IMG/VR virus record: IMGVR_UViG_3300046808_001241
Location: 153,183-217,182 of that record
DNA: 64,000 nt
Reading direction: 5' to 3' (one strand)
Below, one piece after another: positions 7,501 to 16,856 of this stretch; position 1 is the stretch's first letter, and every line of letters begins with the position of its first letter. A program made the translations under genes and the position numbers. The notes below the pieces were generated by a model, which made no database searches, was not told where the DNA came from, and saw only the letters and a list, made by a program, of their open reading frames with translations.

Positions 7501-7822
7501 AATCAGATTTAACGCTTGGAGTTCCATAAGCACTCGGAAGCTGAGTAAAAATCAAAACATCTCGAAAGATGTAATCAACATCAACATCCGTTTGATCGGT
7601 TAATAAAAACCCTTCGTCCGTCCAAGCTGATAAACCAACTCTATAAACTCCAGGAAATCCATATGTAGCTGTGACAGAAGGAGTGTTATATTCAAATAAT
7701 CCATTTCCTAGATCCCATGAAAATTGAGTATATTCGGCTGGAAATTCTGCTGTGTATATGAAATCTGTTGCATATACATTGCCTTTTTGAGATTCCGGAG
7801 TAACTGTGAAATAGTTAGGCAT
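4538..7822 (-). CDS. Baseplate-region protein with N-terminal PKD-like domain and beta-propeller
   Basis: FSWDLGNG...ATYGFPGVYRVGL (PKD-like), repeated ..D..NN.WV blades, adjacent to gp6-like gene. Confidence 0.65.
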   Translation of the reverse strand: MPNYFTVTPESQKGNVYATDFIYTAEFPAEYTQFSWDLGNGLFEYNTPSVTATYGFPGVYRVGLSAWTDEGFLLTDQTDVDVDYIFRDVLIFTQLPSAYGTPSVKSDSPFTIELTSSKIDQPLSIVLQAFNTNSVPSYAVPEKWEFLVPRWRFVDAETDQDLDGPIVLKTNPIYRNNKVVAVSGSASFYYVDDLASGGGCPLLLAATLSTERFTYPPESLRYPYYSYSNSEVARAVISWQINDAIPTRLKVTENYLSDIHPIKWSNVPIPVMITCEFDPTLLDEFGNASTQPSKVLSYPRTNELGGVNKVKLVLSAEGGSLIPEDYYTVEVDGTSYNSSEAPLYFKAFDEQDNTTSGYLFTTITPLSPLSSSVVVAVSTIAANQETGSSTLAFSFPDGYPIYANVYVSHPNVSTINRIDIVTYSSTICGNIQYYKDLGILVEGSASYVSVPVLTAANLANYQLSGTSNVYGMAFDPIQNKLYATDADQDVLYVLNGGLGINQTIPISSYTGDDYNVPSHISIDRFSNIWISLYSREVLLKLDSSLNLVLSATPNTTLGLSAEGSMLVSPPIVETDSNNDAWACYSHTISSALIKFDGDTGAELFRATSLPLTSVPISLTINPENNVWVACRDSNKIQLHSGTDGTLLKTIEGAIRPSYIMLDRSNNLWVTHGYNFLSKYNNTTETFTHYKFYGATKSFEEVSGYTPEDIHKAYYENEIWGGLTVDVFDRVWVVDSEENVLFVFKTSDPFGSLNTFELIPTANTNYVVIGGTNYISALPEEKVRSAQAGGDWSGNRWYQKYSGSYSSLPVRGSSTPFNVYDLNNSFNIAKVNEEFDCAGYFKSLALPEILKENPILFDEFLSAVAGDGILTKEDIGRVAYERIANFVQTHGDFETAEITQLLSFAEQLSVPANIYGTDFPVEVSRLINLFSVPKHRLRGQVVYETDLNKNIGPVLSEASFVSAGQYIFAKDRIYSDKYQLVYVAPLSAGNILIDIQNERDILTINNMSIELPSPNLKYQLSAIQVEGLREPIFDNYYFFEYNEEQIGYKGNIINWDSDFTTVDYTLSSYEEWYGDNGLVETMFNNILTKRLISDN

Positions 7823-9633
7823 TAAATGACTTTATCTGTTTCTTGTTCCAAGACTTCGATTTGCGAAAAAACACTCTGTAAGTTATCGTAATACACAAAT
7901 TCAAAATCTTTCATTTCTATATCATTGACAATCGATTGTTTGTCTAAATCCGGATACGAAGGATTCCACATAAACAAAGAAAGTCCATTGAACGTTTCGT
8001 CTGTATCCAACCTTCTTGTAATAATTTTCGAAACTCCATCAACTGCTAGAATACTTTTAGCTAAAGAGCTGTATTCAAAAAGACCTCCAAGAGTCGCATT
8101 TGTAGGATTGAAGAAGTCTTTAAAGATCGTTTCTACTTCTGATGCAATAGATCTAGTGGATCTTTTATTGTTCGTTGAACGGATAATTTCCAATCTACAA
8201 AAATCTTTATCAGAAACAACTACTTCGTCATTAGTTTTAACACCAATGGATACTGCTTTAAACACTGGATCTAAAAACGTAATTTCAGAAGTAAGAGTCT
8301 TGAGCGAATCAATGTTTGATTTAATGATTTCTTTTTGAGCAGGCAAAAGGTACTTTAATGTTGATTGCTGACTAACTTTTGGAACACAGCAAATATAAAC
8401 GTTATTGAAATTACAGCTATCTGCATAAGCAATTTGATTCAACAAAATCTGCCTAAATGAAGTTGGAGAAACTTGTATGTCATTAAAATATTTTAAATAA
8501 TCGCTGGTATAATCCCAGTTTGAAAACACTCTTACGTCGTTAATAAAGTTGGAGAAGTTTGTTCTAATGAAGGTTTCGTAGTCTTCTTTTGTTACTAAGC
8601 GATATTGGCTCTTGAAGTTTGCAGGAGCATTTTTTCTAATATCATCTGCTGTTTCAATATCTTTTGGAACGGTTGAGCCCACAACATTATTGAAAAACAA
8701 ATTGTTTAATTGGTTTGTGTTTAAGTATGTGAACTGTTCGTTGTTTACTTCAGTCAGTAACGGTCCAAATGTTGAAGTATTAAAGATTGACTTCGTTCCA
8801 GTAGAAATTTCCCCAGGTCCGATAATTCCTTGCTGGCCAGAGCTTTGCAAATAATAAATTGCTACTTGATCGTTTTCTTCAAGCTTTCTTCCATTAATAC
8901 CATCCCCGAAAGTAACTTCATAAAGAAGATCAGAATTTAATCGTTTTTCGAACGATCTGGAAAAAGCTTGTTCCGTATAAAGTGTTGGAACGTTTGCATA
9001 TTGCACCCAACGATTTTGACGAGACTCATACACATATACATCGATGTTAAAGTGATCCACAAAAATGTTTGAAACGTTAATTGTAACAACTTCATTAGGA
9101 TCTCCGCTAGCTCTATATAATGGATTTTCACGATAAATTCCTTGGTATAAAAGTTTTTTGTTTGTTAAGTCTGTAAGTTCTACTGCTTGCGGGTCTGTTG
9201 ATATTGCAAACGAGACGTCTTCGTTAAACGAAAATGGAACTCCAGCAACAGTCAAATAGGTATAACGAGGTATTGTATAAAATCCTGCATTAAGATTTTG
9301 TGCCGAACATTGAAAAGCAAGAGTCGAAGTCTGATAGCCAATTGGTTTGTAGTCAAGAAGCTTTACAATTCTGCTAATGTTTTCATATAACTGAGCTTCA
9401 GTAAAGATCGACTCCGTACTAGTTCTGTTAAGATAGAACATCAAAGTGTTAAAAGAATATGAAATAATATCAATAATAGCAGCTAGATTTGAACCAATAT
9501 AGTTTTGATCGGTATAGATGCCCTGATCATTCATTCTTTGAATAATCAAATTACGAAGCGATATAGCATCAAATGCTGCGTAGCTATCTTTAGGTAGCGG
9601 ATATTCGTTTGTTGGTACTATTTCGTTGGCCAT
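7822..9633 (-). CDS. Baseplate wedge subunit, T4 gp6-like
   Basis: FDAISLRNLI...GSNLAAIIDIISY and QYRLVTKEDY motifs; next to gp25-like gene. Confidence 0.85.
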   Translation of the reverse strand: MANEIVPTNEYPLPKDSYAAFDAISLRNLIIQRMNDQGIYTDQNYIGSNLAAIIDIISYSFNTLMFYLNRTSTESIFTEAQLYENISRIVKLLDYKPIGYQTSTLAFQCSAQNLNAGFYTIPRYTYLTVAGVPFSFNEDVSFAISTDPQAVELTDLTNKKLLYQGIYRENPLYRASGDPNEVVTINVSNIFVDHFNIDVYVYESRQNRWVQYANVPTLYTEQAFSRSFEKRLNSDLLYEVTFGDGINGRKLEENDQVAIYYLQSSGQQGIIGPGEISTGTKSIFNTSTFGPLLTEVNNEQFTYLNTNQLNNLFFNNVVGSTVPKDIETADDIRKNAPANFKSQYRLVTKEDYETFIRTNFSNFINDVRVFSNWDYTSDYLKYFNDIQVSPTSFRQILLNQIAYADSCNFNNVYICCVPKVSQQSTLKYLLPAQKEIIKSNIDSLKTLTSEITFLDPVFKAVSIGVKTNDEVVVSDKDFCRLEIIRSTNNKRSTRSIASEVETIFKDFFNPTNATLGGLFEYSSLAKSILAVDGVSKIITRRLDTDETFNGLSLFMWNPSYPDLDKQSIVNDIEMKDFEFVYYDNLQSVFSQIEVLEQETDKVI

Positions 9634-10773: not shown

Positions 10774-10971
10774 ATGTTCAAAAATATTTACTACAAAACC
10801 TTAGTTTGGACTTCTTATCAAATTGGAGATATTTTGAGTAATTTTGAATATGAATGGAGTTATAACCTCTATCAAAAATGCATGAGCTTTTCTTTAGATT
10901 GCGATGAGCATATTGATTTTTGGTTTTGGAAAGAACCTCCTTTGAACGACGATGAGGATGACAATTTATGA
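10774..10971 (+). CDS. Small hypothetical protein
   Basis: 65 aa, acidic tail, ATGA overlap with nrdB. Confidence 0.5.
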   Translation: MFKNIYYKTLVWTSYQIGDILSNFEYEWSYNLYQKCMSFSLDCDEHIDFWFWKEPPLNDDEDDNL

Positions 10972-11960
10972 AAACACAAAACAGACCTAAAATATTTGAA
11001 GAACAGATAGCAAGAAAGCCAAATCATTTTTCTTGGACGGACTCGTTCGTCGAGAGTATTCAAAACGGATTTTGGACGCATCGGGAATTTAACTTCAAAT
11101 CAGACATTCAGCAATTTAAAGTTAATTTGACCGATCAAGAAAGAGATATTATTATCCGCACGCTTTCTGCTATTGGACAAATTGAAATTGCTGTAAAAAC
11201 ATTCTGGGGAAAGCTCGGAGAGAATTTGAGATTTCCAAATTTTTCTGACCTAGGTTATACTATGGCCCACACAGAAGTCATTCACAATAATGCTTATGAG
11301 CGTCTTATTGACGTATTAGGCTTAAGTGAAGTGTTTGAAGAAAACTTAAAACTTGATTGGATTCAAGGACGGGTTAACTATCTTCGTAAATACACTCACA
11401 AGTTTTATAAAGATTCAAAGAAACAATATCTTTATGCTATTATCTTGTTCACGTTGTTTGTTGAGAACGTTTCGTTGTTTAGTCAGTTCTATATCATTAA
11501 CTGGTTTGCAAGGTTCAAAAACGTTCTTAAAGATACAGACCAACAAGTCAAATACACACGCAATGAAGAAAACCTCCATGCTTTGATTGGCATTAAAATT
11601 ATCAACACTATTAGAGAAGATTATCCAGAAATGTTCGATGAAGAGCTGGAACAAAAGATTCTTCACGAGGCAGAAGAGGCTTATAAGTCAGAAGCAAAGA
11701 TTGTGGATTGGATGATTAACGGCATTCAAGAAGAAGGATTGACTGCTCCAATCCTCAAAGAATTCATTAAGAACAGAATTAATGAATCGTTAACTCAAAT
11801 TGGTTTTAAAACAGCATTTGAAGTTGATAAAGATCTTTTAAAGACTACAATGTGGTTTAATGAAGAATTGCTTGGAGAGAACGCGACAGATTTTTTTCAT
11901 AGTCGGCCCACTTCATATGCAAAGAACAATCAATCATTTTCTGAAGATGACTTGTTTTAA
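10968..11960 (+). CDS. nrdB: Ribonucleotide reductase class Ia beta subunit
   Basis: FWTHRE, EVIHNNAY, ENVSLFSQF and RNEENLH iron-ligand motifs; DFFHSRPTSY tail. Confidence 0.95.
   Translation: MKTQNRPKIFEEQIARKPNHFSWTDSFVESIQNGFWTHREFNFKSDIQQFKVNLTDQERDIIIRTLSAIGQIEIAVKTFWGKLGENLRFPNFSDLGYTMAHTEVIHNNAYERLIDVLGLSEVFEENLKLDWIQGRVNYLRKYTHKFYKDSKKQYLYAIILFTLFVENVSLFSQFYIINWFARFKNVLKDTDQQVKYTRNEENLHALIGIKIINTIREDYPEMFDEELEQKILHEAEEAYKSEAKIVDWMINGIQEEGLTAPILKEFIKNRINESLTQIGFKTAFEVDKDLLKTTMWFNEELLGENATDFFHSRPTSYAKNNQSFSEDDLF
11925..11960 (+). repeat. 36-bp direct repeat, copy 1 (nrdB 3' end); copy 2 at 13683-13718
   Basis: aacaatcaatcattttctgaagatgacttgttttaa vs aataatcaatcattttccgaagatgacttgttttaa; two synonymous differences; both encode NNQSFSEDDLF*. 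Confidence 0.95.
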
Positions 11961-12014
11961 GTTATAAGCTGACTTTACTCGAAAAAGTACACGACTTAGA
12001 TTAAGTAATCTTGT

Positions 12015-13718
12015 ATGTTTACACGCGTATTTGATACAAAGTCTTTTATCGATAAATCCAAACAGAAATTTAGTTCCAAATTTAGTTACGAGGATACGGT
12101 ATATACAAAATCAACAAATAGACTTAACGTAATTTGCAGCATTCACGGCAAAGTCGAAATTCTTCCAGGAGTGCACTTGTCTGGAGCGGGATGCCCGAGC
12201 TGTTCGAGGGCGTTAAATGGCTTGAGTCATAGAATGGACACTGAAACGTTTATTAAAAGAGCTCAAGCTAAACATAATAATTTTTACAATTACGACAAAG
12301 CAACATTTCAAGGTAGTTTAAAAAACCTAATAGTCACTTGTCCTGTGCACGGAGATTTCGCAATTCAAGCAAGTCGACATATAAATAACGGAGCTGGTTG
12401 CTCAAAGTGTGGTTTTATTCGTCGTGTAAAAAAATGCACTACCCCACTCGATGTGTTTTTAGAAAAGACATCCAAAAAACCAAATTTCGAAAATTATGAT
12501 TTCAGTTTAGTTAACTTTAAAAATAAAAAAGAATGGGTTACCGTTATTTGTAAAAAGCACGGAGAGTATAAAACTAAACCTAGATATATTGATAATAGTG
12601 CGTTTTTCGGTTGTAGTCAGTGCAAATGCGAAAGCAGAACTTTCACTACTGATACTTTTATCGAAAAAGCTAAACAAATACATGCCGAAAGATATCTTTA
12701 TGATAGAGTCGAATATAAAGATTCACACACAGAGGTGACACTAATCTGTAAAACTCACGGAGATTATATTTGCAAACCTTATGTACACTTGGCGGGAGGA
12801 GGCTTTTGTCCAAGCTGCACTAACAATGGTGTAAGTTCTTATGAGAGAGAAATAAAATTATTTTTGCAACAAAACGGCATCAGCATAGAATCTTCTTTTA
12901 GAGGATTTGACGGATTGAAGGAAATAGATTTAATTTGTCACAACAAAAAAATAGGAATTGAAGTTAATGGGTTATATTGGCACTGTGACTTATACAAAGA
13001 AAAAAACTTTCATAAACACAAAACGGAAACTTTGTTAAAGCAGGGATATCGACTAATTCATATATTTGAAGACAGCTGGCTTCTCAAAAAAGACGTTTGT
13101 TTGTCAATTTTATTGAATGCGTTTAATAAAACTCCCAATAAAATTTACGCAAGAAAGTGTGAACTAAAACTAATTTCAGATAAAGAGTCAAAACATTTTT
13201 TAAATGCAAACCACGTACAAGGTTCTTGCGTTTCTAAAATAAGATATGGTTTATTCTATAATAACGAGCTTGTATCGGTTATGACCTTCGGCTCTAACAG
13301 AAAAAATTTGGGCAATAAATCAAAACCAAATGAATACGAACTACTAAGGTTTTGTAACAAAACCTACACCAATGTCGTTGGAGGAGCTTCTAAACTGTTT
13401 GCTTCTTTCATCAAACAACACAACCCTCGGAAAATAACAAGCTATTGCAATAGAAGTATCGGAACGGGAAATCTATACAAGCAGCTTGGATTTCAGTTTT
13501 TATACAATACGCCTCCAAACTATTTTTATGTCAGAGGAAGTACAAGATTGCCGAGATTTAAATTTCGAAAAGATGTGTTAATTAAACAAGGACATGATAA
13601 AAACAAAACAGAAGCTTGCATTATGAAGGAATTAGGGTATAATAGAATTTATGACTGTGGAAGCATGAAATTTGAATGGACAAATAATCAATCATTTTCC
13701 GAAGATGACTTGTTTTAA
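12015..13718 (+). CDS. Free-standing Hef-like homing endonuclease (repeated CxxHG/CPxC zinc modules, PD-(D/E)xK/Vsr-like nuclease domain)
   Basis: Four FIxKA..H..Y.Y...C..HG...CPxC repeats; EIDLICHNKKIGIEVNGLYWH; LIHIFEDSW; ELLRFC..VVGGASKLF; lies between nrdB and nrdA. Confidence 0.8.
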   Translation: MFTRVFDTKSFIDKSKQKFSSKFSYEDTVYTKSTNRLNVICSIHGKVEILPGVHLSGAGCPSCSRALNGLSHRMDTETFIKRAQAKHNNFYNYDKATFQGSLKNLIVTCPVHGDFAIQASRHINNGAGCSKCGFIRRVKKCTTPLDVFLEKTSKKPNFENYDFSLVNFKNKKEWVTVICKKHGEYKTKPRYIDNSAFFGCSQCKCESRTFTTDTFIEKAKQIHAERYLYDRVEYKDSHTEVTLICKTHGDYICKPYVHLAGGGFCPSCTNNGVSSYEREIKLFLQQNGISIESSFRGFDGLKEIDLICHNKKIGIEVNGLYWHCDLYKEKNFHKHKTETLLKQGYRLIHIFEDSWLLKKDVCLSILLNAFNKTPNKIYARKCELKLISDKESKHFLNANHVQGSCVSKIRYGLFYNNELVSVMTFGSNRKNLGNKSKPNEYELLRFCNKTYTNVVGGASKLFASFIKQHNPRKITSYCNRSIGTGNLYKQLGFQFLYNTPPNYFYVRGSTRLPRFKFRKDVLIKQGHDKNKTEACIMKELGYNRIYDCGSMKFEWTNNQSFSEDDLF

Positions 13719-13721
13719 AGT

Positions 13722-14489
13722 ATGAGTAAAAGTCATTCTTGGCTTTCAGACCAACTTAAAGGTTTTCCTAACTTTGCAAAAATGTTTCGAGATGTTCTTG
13801 CAGAGGAATTGCAGCAAACCTATTTGGAAGAAGGTTTGATTGCGTCTTGGGATATTGAAAAATTAATCAAAAGAATATCAAACATTATTGGAGACAAAAT
13901 TTTAGAAGTACAAAAAACTACTCTTCCAGACTTTTTAAAAAATACCAACTACGGAGAAGTCTTTACTGTTAATATATTTTTAAAAGAAAAACTAACAAAA
14001 GAAGAAACAAATCAAGTAGACCAACTTTTGGATTTGTTTGGGTATACTAATGCTTTGTGGATTGAACCAGACGGACTTCAGTTGCAGCTAGAACCAAGGT
14101 ATCCAGTCAAACTTAACGAACTTATAAAACAAACTTCTGACAACTATCTTTTCCATATAACTCAAAAGAAATCGCTAGACAAGATTAAAGAAATAGGATT
14201 AGCTCCAAGACCTTCAGAAACTAAATTTGAACATCCGGGAAATAGAATTTATTTGTTGTGGCTGCCAGCAGTACAAAATAAAGGGTTGATTGTGAACGCT
14301 CTTGTTAAACAGTTAGCAAACAACAAAAAGCTGGAAGAAAAAGATTTTGCTGTTATGATGCTAAAATATAACCCTAAATACGACTACTACCTAGATGATA
14401 CTACAACATTGCTCGATCAAAAAATTATAGCAATGTTCACCACAAATAATATCAACCCAAAAGAAATTGTTAAAATTATAAATTTATGA
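13722..14489 (+). CDS. ADP-ribosyltransferase-fold (Tpt1/KptA/DarT-like) protein, paralog 1
   Basis: LFHIT...L..I...GL.P and HPGNRIYL shared with 31058 and 31792 ORFs. Confidence 0.6.
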   Translation: MSKSHSWLSDQLKGFPNFAKMFRDVLAEELQQTYLEEGLIASWDIEKLIKRISNIIGDKILEVQKTTLPDFLKNTNYGEVFTVNIFLKEKLTKEETNQVDQLLDLFGYTNALWIEPDGLQLQLEPRYPVKLNELIKQTSDNYLFHITQKKSLDKIKEIGLAPRPSETKFEHPGNRIYLLWLPAVQNKGLIVNALVKQLANNKKLEEKDFAVMMLKYNPKYDYYLDDTTTLLDQKIIAMFTTNNINPKEIVKIINL

Positions 14490-14731
14490 AACGAATATAC
14501 AAACATTATCCGAATATATTCAATTTCAAAATTGGTAAAAAACTAAATATCGGACTTTGGAAGTATCAATCTAGTATAGTTTTTAGATGGATAAATCTCC
14601 ATCCAAAAATTTGGAAGTTTTGGAGATTAAATTACTTAAAGGGTAAGTTTGTATACTTTGAGTGCACAATATATAAAAAAATAGAAATTTGGTGGGACGG
14701 ATTTTTATTTCAAATAGTGCTAGATAAATGA
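14486..14731 (+). CDS. Hypothetical basic/aromatic protein
   Basis: 81 aa, ATGA overlap with upstream gene. Confidence 0.45.
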   Translation: MKRIYKHYPNIFNFKIGKKLNIGLWKYQSSIVFRWINLHPKIWKFWRLNYLKGKFVYFECTIYKKIEIWWDGFLFQIVLDK

Positions 14732-14754
14732 GAAATTTTTTATAAGATTAACAT

Positions 14755-16404
14755 ATGACTGAAAAATACTATTGGCTTAACAATGACTCGCGAAAATTTC
14801 TTGAGCGTGGATATCTTCTTGAAGAAGAAACTCCGGAACAACGAATTCGAGACATTGCAGAAGCTGCTGAAAAATATCTTGGTATAAAAGGGTTTGCTGA
14901 TAAATTCGAAGAATACGTTGCAAAAGGTTTCTACAGCTTAAGCTCGCCTGTATGGTCCAACTTTGGAAGAAAACGTGGTCTTCCTATAAGTTGTTTTGGA
15001 TCTTACATATCCGATACAATGGAATCGATTTTGCATAAAGTTTCAGAAGTAGGTATTATGACAAAACACGGAGGAGGAACTTCTGCATACTTTGGAGCAA
15101 TTCGAGGAAGAGGAACTACAATCTCTTGTGGAGGAGAATCTACAGGATCTGTACATTTTATGGAGCTTTACAACAAGCTAATGAATGTCGTTTCGCAAGG
15201 TAATGTTCGTAGAGGCTCATTTGCTGCATATCTTCCCATCGATCACAAAGATATTGAAGAGTTTCTTGAGATTCGTTCAGAAGGACATGACATCCAAGAA
15301 ATGTCGTTTGGTGTATGTGTTTCTGATCAATGGATGAAAGACATGGTTGATGGAGACAAAGACAAACGCAAGATTTGGTCCAAAGTCATTAAAAAGCGGT
15401 TCGAATCTGGTTATCCTTATATCTTTTTTTCTGATACAGCCAATAATAACGCTCCACAAGTTTATAAAGACAAAGGACTAAAGATTCACAATTCCAATCT
15501 TTGCACGGAGATTTTTTTATCCAACTCAGAAGAGGAATCTTTTGTTTGTGATCTATCGTCACTTAATCTCGAAAAGTGGGATGAAATCAAAAATACAGAT
15601 GCTGTTCAAACATTAGTGTACTTCCTCGACGCTGTGATGTCAGAGTTTATTGACAAAACAGAAGGCATGCAATTCATGGAAGCTCCAAGAAAGTTTGCGA
15701 TTAACCAAAGAGCTCTTGGTGTAGGTGTTCTTGGATGGCATTCGCTGCTCCAAACTAAGATGATTGCTTTTGAGTCATTTGATGCGAAGATACTTAATGT
15801 GGATGTTTGGAAGACAATACGGGAACGAGCTGACAAAGCCACAGAAGAACTTGCTGGTCTTTTTGGAGAACCAGAATTGCTTAAGGGCTATGGAAGAAGG
15901 AATACAACAACTCTTGCCATTGCACCCACAACCAGCTCAGCGTTTATCTTGGGCCAAGTATCCCAGTCAATTGAGCCCTATAATTCAAACTATTATGTTC
16001 GCGACTTGGCTAAAGGTAAGTTTTCATACAAAAATCCATACCTTAAATCACTGCTAAAACAAAAGGACAAAGATAATGATGAAACATGGTCTTCGATTCT
16101 TGCTCATGGTGGTTCTGTTCAGCATCTTGATTTCTTATCAGATAATGAAAAAGACGTATTCAAAACTTTTGGAGAGCTTTCCCAAAAAGAAATCGTCATC
16201 CAAGCGGCGCAAAGGCAAAAATACATTGATCAAGGTCAATCCTTAAACGTAATGATTCCTCATGATGCTAAACCAAAAGACGTTAATGAGCTTTTGATAT
16301 TTGGTTGGGAACAGGGAATCAAGAGTTTCTACTACCAAAAATCTACCTCGCCCTCACAAAAGCTAGCTAGATCGATTCTTACCTGCAAATCTTGTGAAGG
16401 GTAA
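14755..16404 (+). CDS. nrdA: Ribonucleotide reductase class Ia alpha subunit (no ATP cone)
   Basis: PISCF, SNLCTEI, CDLSSLNL, AIAPT, KSFYYQ, C-terminal CKSCEG. Confidence 0.95.
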   Translation: MTEKYYWLNNDSRKFLERGYLLEEETPEQRIRDIAEAAEKYLGIKGFADKFEEYVAKGFYSLSSPVWSNFGRKRGLPISCFGSYISDTMESILHKVSEVGIMTKHGGGTSAYFGAIRGRGTTISCGGESTGSVHFMELYNKLMNVVSQGNVRRGSFAAYLPIDHKDIEEFLEIRSEGHDIQEMSFGVCVSDQWMKDMVDGDKDKRKIWSKVIKKRFESGYPYIFFSDTANNNAPQVYKDKGLKIHNSNLCTEIFLSNSEEESFVCDLSSLNLEKWDEIKNTDAVQTLVYFLDAVMSEFIDKTEGMQFMEAPRKFAINQRALGVGVLGWHSLLQTKMIAFESFDAKILNVDVWKTIRERADKATEELAGLFGEPELLKGYGRRNTTTLAIAPTTSSAFILGQVSQSIEPYNSNYYVRDLAKGKFSYKNPYLKSLLKQKDKDNDETWSSILAHGGSVQHLDFLSDNEKDVFKTFGELSQKEIVIQAAQRQKYIDQGQSLNVMIPHDAKPKDVNELLIFGWEQGIKSFYYQKSTSPSQKLARSILTCKSCEG

Positions 16405-16856
16405 TGCAAGGGATTAGTCATAGAGTTTTCAATAGCGTTTTAGCAAGCGACTTGTTGATTTTATTTTATAAACAACAGCCCTTGCTGACATCTATTGTTG
16501 CTGGAGGCATGATTCTGTTTAGCAGTTTTCCTGATAAAGTAGAAGAATTTAATCTTAAACACAGAGGCATAAGCCATTCAATAATATTATATCTTTTACT
16601 TGGAGTATTATATTATTGGTTTTCAATTCATCTTCATAACTATTTTGATTGGATTGTGTATATTGGATATGGTTTAGTAGCAGGATCAATAGGACACATC
16701 CTTGCAGATATGTTTAGTAAAAGAGGAGTAAGAATTCTTGGAGCTAAGTTTAATTACGGTCTATATACTACAGGAAAAGTTTCTGAGCAGATCTTTTTAT
16801 TTGGATTTGCTTTAGTGAATTACCTGTTGATATACTGGTTCGTGTTTTGTAAATAG
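16404..16856 (+). CDS. Membrane-bound metal-dependent hydrolase (YdjM/YbcI-like)
   Basis: GISH, S.FPD, HRGISHS, GHILADMF motifs, hydrophobic segments. Confidence 0.8.
   Translation: MQGISHRVFNSVLASDLLILFYKQQPLLTSIVAGGMILFSSFPDKVEEFNLKHRGISHSIILYLLLGVLYYWFSIHLHNYFDWIVYIGYGLVAGSIGHILADMFSKRGVRILGAKFNYGLYTTGKVSEQIFLFGFALVNYLLIYWFVFCK

What the first reader, a model, noticed from the sequence alone, without database searches (positions are those of the whole stretch)
11925..13718. Endonuclease inserted into the nrdB 3' end and fused to a duplicate NrdB C-terminal tail
Seen in sequence: NrdB and the Hef-like ORF both end in NNQSFSEDDLF, encoded by a 36-bp repeat with only synonymous differences. 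Inference: the element inserted 11 codons before the nrdB stop, supplied a replacement 3' end, and now reads into the original one. Established: the beta-subunit C-terminal peptide is the alpha-binding determinant of class Ia RNRs, and such peptides inhibit holoenzyme assembly. The endonuclease might therefore dock on NrdA or compete with NrdB.
Basis: partly seen in the sequence, partly recalled or inferred. Interest (0 to 1): 0.68.

Follow-up and report, generated by a model that had tools for sequence, protein, structure and literature searches.

The report
Homing endonuclease carrying NrdB's tail
A selfish DNA-cutting gene sitting just behind a phage's ribonucleotide reductase small-subunit gene ends in a second copy of that gene's last 11 codons; relatives show this is a real, inherited junction scar that recombination keeps similar and that sometimes decays, with no sign so far that the borrowed tail does anything.

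Summary
nrdB (10968-11960) and the 567-aa endonuclease ORF (12015-13718) both end in NNQSFSEDDLF. The two 36-nt copies differ at two synonymous positions, and they are the only two copies in the 217-kb phage genome.

The ORF is an intact free-standing Hef-type (EDxHD, Vsr-like) homing endonuclease.
- A relative without the element (L005) has nrdB followed directly by the 13722 gene, with the same 3-nt spacing.
- The nearest endonuclease relatives (67-72% identical) sit at the same place and carry the same fused tail. They form one clade.
- Its sister clade also sits right after nrdB but ends with its own stop and has no duplication. The fusion is therefore a derived change at the right-hand junction.
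- An unrelated Hef-like gene in another phage (L186) independently ends in its own nrdB's last five codons.

The two tail copies within a genome are more alike than copies from different genomes. In one genome they share a non-synonymous variant. One subclade carries two different nonsense mutations and a missense in the fused tail.

The best reading is a double-strand-break repair scar, homogenised by recombination and possibly serving as a right-hand homology arm. This is a new variant of a known kind.

The parts
10968..11960 (+). nrdB, class I ribonucleotide reductase small subunit, complete (330 aa)
   Evidence: Pfam Ribonuc_red_sm 3.5e-44; phrog_86 1.1e-61; 75-97% identical to NrdB of 80 related viral contigs.
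11925..11960 (+). Tail copy 1: the last 11 codons of nrdB plus TAA (NNQSFSEDDLF*)
   Evidence: The tail is the conserved end of NrdB in relatives: 37 of 80 end in KNQSFSEDDLF, and the others differ by one to a few residues.
11961..12014 (+). 54-nt spacer, the 5' flank of the endonuclease gene, with four stops in the nrdB frame
   Evidence: Blocks of it are conserved in L109, L110, L183, L184, L185 and, more loosely, in the unfused elements L177, L179 and L181. No sigma-70-type promoter or terminator site falls in the spacer, and site counts over 11800-14000 do not exceed shuffles.
12015..13718 (+). Free-standing Hef-type homing endonuclease ORF, 567 aa, ending at the duplicated nrdB stop
   Evidence: phrog_559 3.5e-111 and phrog_3339 3e-96. 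There are 916 phage records with homologues, among which 'Hef-like homing endonuclease' recurs as an annotation, and 4253 relatives at E<=1e-10. AlphaFold2 mean pLDDT is 88.9.
12087..12824 (+). Four DUF723-type Cys/His zinc-ribbon-like modules (about aa 25-270), the presumed DNA-binding part
   Evidence: Pfam DUF723 2.8e-10. Invariant or near-invariant C/H columns are C41/H44/C60/C63, C109/H112/C129/C132, C179/H182/C200/C203 and C245/H248/C265/C268.
12831..13094 (+). Vsr-like (EDxHD) nuclease domain, aa 273-360
   Evidence: A profile of 46 family members hits PDB 3r3p (I-Bth0305I catalytic domain) at E 3e-5. The alignment puts D305, E316/N318 and H323 on that enzyme's D196, E/N208 and H213. 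Pfam MTES_1575 is below its cutoff.
13137..13682 (+). C-terminal domain with a GNAT/Mom-like fold, aa 375-556; the last conserved family residue is W555
   Evidence: Foldseek best hit is phage Mu Mom 8bv8, E 7.8e-7. Pfam Mom 1.7e-4 is below its cutoff. Family members normally stop 0-15 residues after the conserved aromatic (W or Y), most within 2-6.
13683..13718 (+). Tail copy 2: a duplicate of the last 11 nrdB codons plus TAA, read as aa 557-567 of the endonuclease
   Evidence: pLDDT is below 50 for residues 561-567, so the tail lies outside the fold. It is followed by a 3-nt gap and the ATG of the next gene, as after nrdB in L005.
13722..14489 (+). Downstream gene (255 aa, unknown function), the right neighbour of the element
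   Evidence: 87% identical to the gene that follows nrdB directly in L005. No Pfam or PHROG hit.
14755..16404 (+). nrdA, large subunit (549 aa), the natural partner of the NrdB tail
   Evidence: Pfam Ribonuc_red_lgC 7.3e-97. In most relatives it follows nrdB within 100 nt.

Best explanation
A free-standing Hef-type (EDxHD, Vsr-like) homing endonuclease gene occupies the site just behind nrdB in this 217-kb freshwater phage.

In one small clade of these elements the endonuclease has lost its own last few codons, its stop and its 3' flank. Directly after its last conserved tryptophan it is joined in frame to a second copy of the last 10-12 codons plus stop of nrdB. nrdB itself stays whole.

The most likely origin (inferred) is an aberrant repair of a break in the 3' end of nrdB.
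- The left end copied the nrdB end, the spacer and the endonuclease gene from a donor.
- The right end, which began with the tail codons, was joined illegitimately to the end of the endonuclease gene.

Since then the copy has been kept like the genuine nrdB tail by recombination, either with the copy in the same genome or with nrdB alleles of co-infecting phages. That explains the mostly synonymous differences.

The copy may also help the element (inferred). It gives right-hand homology to any nrdB allele, whichever gene follows nrdB.

The NrdB peptide on the endonuclease is a by-product. It is exposed and could touch NrdA, but it is dispensable.
For: Shown:
- Family and intactness of the endonuclease.
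- The element-free allele L005 has nrdB, a 3-nt gap, then the 13722 gene.
- Relatives at 67-72% identity (L109, L110, L185, L183, L184, P0003, P0005) sit at the same site. Those with the nrdB end in view show a homologous spacer and a 34-36-nt flanking repeat. They form one clade with SH-aLRT 99.
- The sister clade (L177, L179, L181) sits directly after nrdB but has its own stop 2-15 residues after the tryptophan and no repeat.
- The right neighbour of tail copy 2 varies. It is nrdA in L109, L110, L185 and P0005; the 81-aa ORF in L183 and L184; the 255-aa gene in the window.
- 22 of 75 element-free relatives carry 0.2-1.8 kb of other cargo between nrdB and nrdA.
- Within-genome copies are more alike than between-genome copies: summed distance 16 against a mean of 24.4, with 4 of 120 permutations as low.
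- L183 shares the non-synonymous Ser-to-Asp variant in both copies.
- 14 of the 16 nucleotide differences between paired copies are synonymous.
- The tail decays in one subclade. L184 has CAA to TAA with the rest of the tail intact behind it. P0005 has Asn-to-Lys plus a stop. L183 has Asp-to-Val.
- A second, independent capture exists. L186 (P0036) is sister to an unfused protein and ends in the last five codons of its own, different nrdB tail, with a 28-nt flanking repeat.
Against: - No cleavage site is known, so the link between the repeat boundary and a break is inference.
- Both independent fusions are in frame (chance about 1 in 9). This hints at selection for an open frame or for the peptide.
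- In four lineages the ten core tail residues are unchanged, although the endonucleases have diverged by about 30%.
- The homogenisation test rests on only five genomes and 30 nt (p about 0.03).
- A homology arm of 33 nt is short.
- No reads or contigs showing precise loss of the element were found.
Confidence: 0.6

Rival explanations
1. The borrowed tail works at the protein level. It docks the endonuclease on NrdA, or competes with NrdB for the tail-binding site. That would recruit the enzyme to the nucleotide-synthesis and replication machinery, or modulate reductase activity.
For: - The tail is identical to the peptide that, by established knowledge of class I reductases, binds the large subunit.
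- It is predicted to be disordered and outside the fold (pLDDT below 50).
- The ten core residues are unchanged in the window, P0002, P0003 and P0004 despite about 30% endonuclease divergence.
- Two independent fusions are both in frame.
Against: - Three members of one subclade carry three different lesions in the tail: two nonsense and one missense. P0005 alone was found on three contigs from three samples.
- The L186 fusion contributes only five nrdB-derived residues.
- Conservation has a non-protein explanation: within-genome homogenisation, including a shared non-synonymous variant.
- The sister clade at the same site does without any tail.
- From general knowledge, homing endonucleases are usually made at low levels. 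Competition with an abundant NrdB is therefore unlikely.
Confidence: 0.12
2. The point is where translation ends, not the peptide. By reading to the native nrdB stop, the endonuclease ORF keeps the stop-3 nt-ATG arrangement that couples translation of the next gene (nrdA or other cargo) to the upstream reading frame.
For: - The pattern of stop, 3 nt, ATG follows nrdB in most element-free relatives inspected (L003, L004, L005, L007, L011; not L006 or L048) and follows the fused endonuclease in the window and L109. L183 and L184 have an overlapping TAATG.
- Both independent fusions are in frame.
Against:
- Unfused relatives have gaps of 14-48 nt before nrdA.
- L110 has a 6-nt gap.
- This model does not explain amino-acid conservation.
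Confidence: 0.1
3. A purely neutral scar. A single illegitimate recombination produced the duplication. It gives no benefit to the element and is simply not yet erased, with occasional gene conversion from the nrdB copy.
For: - The fusion arose once in this clade.
- Only five protein clusters among 5.8 billion carry it, and none was found in IMG/VR by pattern.
- It is decaying in one subclade.
Against: - It recurs independently in L186.
- It has persisted through about 30% endonuclease divergence and through changes of the right-hand neighbour.
Confidence: 0.15
4. An assembly artefact or chimeric contig created the second copy.
For: The window comes from a metagenome assembly, and short repeats can mis-join contigs.
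Against: - Identical contigs from a run of a different study span both junctions, and a run from a third study also spans both.
- The same architecture is present in at least six independent assemblies from other samples.
Confidence: 0.01

Closest known systems
Hef of T4-related phage U5 (Sandegren, Nord and Sjoberg 2005, as summarised in PMC2988022)
   Same: A free-standing endonuclease gene lying between the two aerobic reductase genes and cutting nrdB. Homologues of the window's protein recur in phage records under the annotation 'Hef-like homing endonuclease'. PMC3239194 places Hef-type enzymes in the Vsr-like EDxHD family.
   Different: No fusion to a duplicated end of the target gene is described in the review read here. 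The gene order in T-even phages is nrdA, endonuclease, nrdB; here it is nrdB, endonuclease, (cargo), nrdA. The U5 sequence and the original paper were not available, so direct homology to U5 Hef was not tested.
I-Bth0305I, prototype of the EDxHD family (PDB 3R3P; PMC3239194)
   Same: The catalytic domain. The profile hit is E 3e-5, and the Asp, Glu/Asn and His positions align.
   Different: I-Bth0305I is encoded in a group I intron of recA and binds DNA through NUMOD/HTH motifs. Here there is no intron (no Rfam hit). The protein has four zinc-ribbon-like modules and a GNAT/Mom-like C-terminal domain. The position of the fifth motif residue is an invariant His (H333) in this family.
mobE in Aeromonas phage Aeh1 nrdA (Crona et al. 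2011, PMC3045599); also mobE and I-TevIII at T4 nrdB (PMC2988022)
   Same: Homing endonuclease genes target phage reductase genes, and the insertion event creates new terminal peptides.
   Different: In Aeh1 the host protein fragments gained element-derived tails that are essential for assembly. Here the host gene is untouched, and it is the endonuclease that gained a host-derived tail, with no shown function.
Integrative elements that insert into the 3' end of a gene and carry a replacement end (att-type direct repeats; general knowledge)
   Same: The element is flanked by direct repeats made of the target's 3' end. The target gene stays intact. Recombination between the repeats would excise the element precisely.
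   Different: There is no integrase or recombinase. The element has a single ORF, the endonuclease. The sister clade inserts without any repeat.
C-terminal peptides of the reductase small subunit as inhibitors of subunit association (established knowledge, not checked here)
   Same: The 11 residues on the endonuclease are identical to the NrdB end.
   Different: Those are free peptides or the natural long flexible tail of NrdB. Here 11 residues follow directly on the last strand of a folded domain. Binding was not shown.

Membership tests
EDxHD / Hef-type (Vsr-like) homing endonucleases | Vsr-like catalytic domain carrying the conserved acidic and histidine residues | tested here: met
   The profile of 46 members hits 3r3p at E 3e-5. 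D305, E316, N318 and H323 align with D196, E, N208 and H213 of I-Bth0305I. D305, E316, H323, H333 and D353 are invariant in the alignment. The residue aligned with D222 is His here.
EDxHD / Hef-type (Vsr-like) homing endonucleases | Sequence membership in the phage Hef-like family | tested here: met
   phrog_559 3.5e-111 over residues 72-559. tblastn finds 916 phage records; 'Hef-like homing endonuclease' recurs among the annotations of the listed hits.
EDxHD / Hef-type (Vsr-like) homing endonucleases | Patchy presence at one conserved site among related genomes, with an element-free allele | tested here: met
   Absent from this site in all 80 best IMG/VR relatives, including L003 (97% NrdB identity) and L005 (empty site). 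Present at the same site in L109, L110, L183-L185, L177, L179 and L181.
EDxHD / Hef-type (Vsr-like) homing endonucleases | Site-specific cleavage of the element-free allele and super-Mendelian inheritance | not testable with these tools
   Needs a cleavage assay and mixed infections.
Intron- or intein-borne endonuclease | Self-splicing RNA or an in-frame protein-splicing element interrupting the host gene | tested here: not met
   nrdB is complete and ends with its own stop. There are four in-frame stops in the spacer. No Rfam family matches at E<=1 in 10900-14800, and there are no intein domains.
Integrase-type element with a replacement 3' end of the target gene | A site-specific recombinase encoded in the element | tested here: not met
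   The only ORF between the repeats with family hits is the endonuclease.
NrdA-binding C-terminal peptide of class I NrdB | Same sequence as the partner-binding end of the phage's own NrdB | tested here: met
   11 of 11 residues are identical.
NrdA-binding C-terminal peptide of class I NrdB | Flexible and exposed, not part of a fold | tested here: met
   The last strand ends at residue 556. Residues 561-567 have pLDDT below 50. This is a prediction only.
NrdA-binding C-terminal peptide of class I NrdB | Binds NrdA when carried by the endonuclease | not testable with these tools
   Needs pull-down, SPR or ITC with and without the last 11 residues.
NrdA-binding C-terminal peptide of class I NrdB | Maintained by selection in the endonuclease lineage | tested here: inconclusive
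   Intact in four lineages, and 14 of 16 paired differences are synonymous. However, one subclade has two nonsense mutations and one missense. Homogenisation with the nrdB copy explains the pattern equally well.

The most novel reading that the evidence does not exclude
The endonuclease uses the captured NrdB peptide to dock on the phage NrdA. This would place a homing endonuclease in the nucleotide-synthesis and replication complex, or let a selfish element tune the enzyme encoded by its own target gene. Capture of the target's interaction peptide would then be a recurrent adaptive strategy of Hef-like elements, seen twice independently here.
Probability: 0.1. Interest if true: 0.7.

Novelty: new variant of a known kind. 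Interest (0 to 1): 0.4.

Why it matters
Homing endonuclease genes in phage reductase genes are textbook cases. How a free-standing one gets into a new genomic context and stays mobile there is much less clear.

This locus gives a natural series at one site: an empty site, a plain insertion, and an insertion fused to a duplicated target end. A second, independent fusion exists in another phage.

If the boundary of the duplication marks the break, it predicts the cleavage site of an uncharacterised Hef-type enzyme. If the duplicated end acts as a portable homology arm, it would explain how such an element keeps homing at a site where the downstream gene is often exchanged.

The more exciting idea, that the enzyme borrows its target's protein-binding peptide, is cheap to test. 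The decay seen in one subclade makes it unlikely.

Tried and rejected
- Complex prediction of NrdA with endonuclease residues 375-567: no verdict, best score 0.31 against a mark of 0.32. It is not used as evidence either way.
- Pattern scan of IMG/VR for the endonuclease-tail junction: no matches.
- Endonuclease-based scans of viral and metagenome contigs: only relatives at 42% identity or less, so all close relatives came from the protein word search.
- A second protein search restricted to residues 528-567: no further fused proteins.
- Laying contigs of four runs on the locus: no contig joins copy 1 to the sequence behind copy 2. Precise loss was therefore not seen, but contigs drop rare variants.
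- Co-conversion tract in nrdB: the last 90 nt are somewhat less like L003 (77% against about 88%). The gene is mosaic throughout, so no boundary could be called.
- The 8-nt extension of the repeat past the stop: rejected as chance, because those bases lie in the spacer conserved among elements.
- Promoter and terminator scan: no promoter or terminator site in the spacer, and counts over the region scanned do not exceed shuffles.
- Rfam: no hits.
- Search for element-free close relatives of L186: the best has 73% NrdB identity, so its empty site is unknown.
- The original Hef paper (PMC1275590) is not held.
- One literature search for a prior description of such a fusion found none. This search was not exhaustive.
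- DNA for the P0003, P0005 and P0013 contigs was not available. The inferred remnant behind the P0005 stop therefore rests on gene spacing only.
Full report
**Observation**

The window is the last 64 kb of a 217,182-bp virus record with direct terminal repeats, from freshwater metagenomes.
- nrdB is at 10968-11960. A 567-aa ORF is at 12015-13718. Both end in NNQSFSEDDLF followed by TAA.
- The repeat finder reports copies at 11925-11968 and 13683-13726, 39 of 44 identical.
- Over the 11 codons plus stop, 34 of 36 nt match, and both differences are synonymous.
- The 36-mer occurs twice in the window with up to 3 mismatches and never in shuffles.
- A degenerate version of the tail occurs exactly twice in the whole genome.
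- The 8 nt that the tool adds after the stop are probably chance. In the left copy these bases belong to a spacer shared by related elements.
- Contigs identical to the window, from a metatranscriptome run of another study, span both junctions. A run from a third study also spans both. The arrangement is therefore not an assembly artefact. That library does not prove transcription.

**What the ORF is**

- It matches phrog_559 at 3.5e-111 and phrog_3339 at 3e-96.
- It has homologues in 916 phage records, where 'Hef-like homing endonuclease' is a recurring annotation, and more than 4000 relatives in the large protein collection.
- It has four DUF723-type Cys/His modules.
- It has a Vsr-like nuclease domain at residues 273-360. 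A family profile hits the I-Bth0305I catalytic domain (3r3p) at E 3e-5, with the Asp, Glu/Asn and His positions aligned.
- It has a C-terminal domain at residues 375-556 whose predicted fold is closest to phage Mu Mom and GNAT enzymes.
- PMC3239194 names Hef-type phage enzymes as members of this EDxHD family. PMC2988022 records that hef of phage U5 cuts nrdB.
- There is no intron or intein.
- A 39%-identical paralogue with its own stop lies elsewhere in the same genome.

**The site in relatives**

- Among the 80 best NrdB relatives in IMG/VR, none has this endonuclease after nrdB.
- L005 is an empty site. nrdB is followed after 3 nt by a gene 87% identical to the 13722 gene.
- L003 is the closest relative (97% NrdB, 93% NrdA). 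It carries unrelated cargo there.
- 22 of 75 relatives have 0.2-1.8 kb between nrdB and nrdA.
- After nrdB, the junction reads stop, 3 nt, ATG in most of the relatives inspected.

**The fused clade**

- The nearest endonucleases are P0002, P0003, P0004/P0122 and the cluster P0005/P0123/P0124, at 67-72% identity. Wherever the contig reaches that far, each lies about 55 nt behind nrdB.
- They lie directly in front of nrdA or of a homologue of the 81-aa ORF.
- L109, L110, L185 and L183 carry the same 34-36-nt flanking repeat.
- On a quick maximum-likelihood tree these eight proteins form one clade (SH-aLRT 99).
- Their sister group contains P0006, P0007 and P0008. These three also lie directly behind nrdB with a recognisably related spacer. 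They end 2-15 residues after the conserved tryptophan with their own stop and have no repeat.
- The fusion is therefore a derived change at the right-hand junction of an element that was already resident at this site. The element does not bring a replacement end as part of its normal structure.

**Is the tail selected?**

For selection:
- The ten core residues are unchanged in four lineages, while the endonucleases differ by about 30% and NrdA by 13-17%.
- 14 of the 16 nucleotide differences between paired copies in five genomes are synonymous.
- A variant in another run shows two further synonymous changes.

Against selection, or neutral to it:
- Paired copies within a genome are more alike than copies from different genomes: summed distance 16 against a mean of 24.4, with 4 of 120 permutations as low.
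- L183 has Asp instead of Ser in both its nrdB tail and its endonuclease tail. The second copy is therefore homogenised with real nrdB tails. This supplies variation that has already been filtered by selection on NrdB.
- The subclade P0005/P0123/P0124 (87-96% identical to each other) carries three different lesions:
  - L184 (P0124) has CAA to TAA at the second tail codon, with the rest of the tail intact behind it.
  - P0005 has an Asn-to-Lys change plus a stop after QSF.
  - L183 (P0123) has Asp to Val.
- The tail peptide is thus dispensable, at least in that subclade.

**A second case**

- P0036 (L186) is a 492-aa Hef-like protein of another subfamily, in a different phage. It also sits between nrdB and nrdA.
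- Its NrdB ends in DEDDLI, and the endonuclease ends in YIYEDDLI.
- A 28-nt repeat with three mismatches flanks the gene. The left copy spans the overlap of the nrdB stop with the endonuclease start.
- Its sister on the tree, P0044, ends without such a tail.
- Capture of the nrdB end has therefore happened at least twice, both times in frame.

**Mechanism (inferred)**

- The simplest account is a break in the 3' end of nrdB in a recipient.
- The left end copies the nrdB end, the spacer and the endonuclease gene from a donor. The right end, starting with the tail codons, is joined to the end of the endonuclease gene without homology.
- This keeps nrdB whole and keeps the native stop in front of the next gene.
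- It predicts that the left edge of the duplication marks the cut.
- Because the gene after nrdB is often exchanged, a copy of the conserved nrdB end at the right border would give the element homology on both sides with any nrdB allele.
- The three different right neighbours of copy 2 fit this idea.
- Recombination between the two copies would remove the element precisely, but no such product was seen.

- The tail is predicted to be disordered, with pLDDT below 50 for residues 561-567, so contact with NrdA is physically possible.
- No computation here supports or excludes binding.
- The lesions in one subclade, the tail-less sister clade at the same site, and the five-residue L186 fusion argue that a protein-level role is not needed.
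- I put it at about 0.1.

**Verdict**

This is a real feature. The endonuclease family and the target gene are known. The in-frame capture of the target's 3' end, seen in one clade and once more independently, is a new variant. I found no description of it in the papers read or in one literature search, which was not exhaustive.

Noticed in passing
L186:2990-3015 and L186:4455-4490: Second, independent capture of an nrdB tail by a Hef-like endonuclease of another subfamily. NrdB ends in DEDDLI and the endonuclease ends in YIYEDDLI. A 28-nt flanking repeat also covers the first four codons of the endonuclease.
   Followed up: partly
window 11961-14754; loci L003-L082: The space between nrdB and nrdA is a cargo hotspot. 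22 of 75 relatives carry 0.2-1.8 kb there. L003 has a 353-aa protein with several HTH motifs at 7743-8804, possibly another mobile endonuclease; Pfam found no nuclease domain.
   Followed up: partly
G000:C1:104569-105477 (outside the window; L002:1492-2925, minus strand): A second Hef-like endonuclease gene in the same phage, 477 aa and 39% identical. It has its own stop and no flanking repeat. It lies about 100 nt from a gene that looks like a major capsid or structural gene.
   Followed up: partly
window 13137-13682: The C-terminal domain of the Hef-like family has a predicted GNAT fold closest to the phage Mu DNA-modification protein Mom (Foldseek E 7.8e-7; Pfam Mom below cutoff). Its role in an endonuclease is unknown.
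   Followed up: partly
window 13722-14489; L003:5262-6011: The 255-aa gene behind the element has no family hit. A 29-30% identical paralogue lies upstream of nrdB in L003-L005. The protein atlas gives only a weak lead (0.90) to a DarT/PARP-named cluster.
   Followed up: partly
L110:5654-7018: A gene with a Cas12f1-like TNB (TnpB-type) domain sits directly after nrdA in a related element-bearing phage contig.
   Followed up: no
contig of P0013 (no DNA held): A related contig has Hef-like genes on both sides of nrdB. Its nrdA carries an intein with a LAGLIDADG domain, so three mobile elements sit at one reductase locus.
   Followed up: no
window 11150-11315 (nrdB nt about 180-345): A tract of nrdB is 100% identical in DNA to L003, within a background of about 85-90% identity. 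This is a sign of recent recombination inside the gene.
   Followed up: no
window 16404-16856: A small membrane protein of the YdjM family (Pfam 8.5e-10) overlaps the nrdA stop codon.
   Followed up: no
L051, L053, L056 (about 7700-8530 and 12130-12960, minus strand): Related phages without the element at nrdB carry a 42%-identical Hef-like gene about 3-4 kb downstream of nrdA on the other strand.
   Followed up: no
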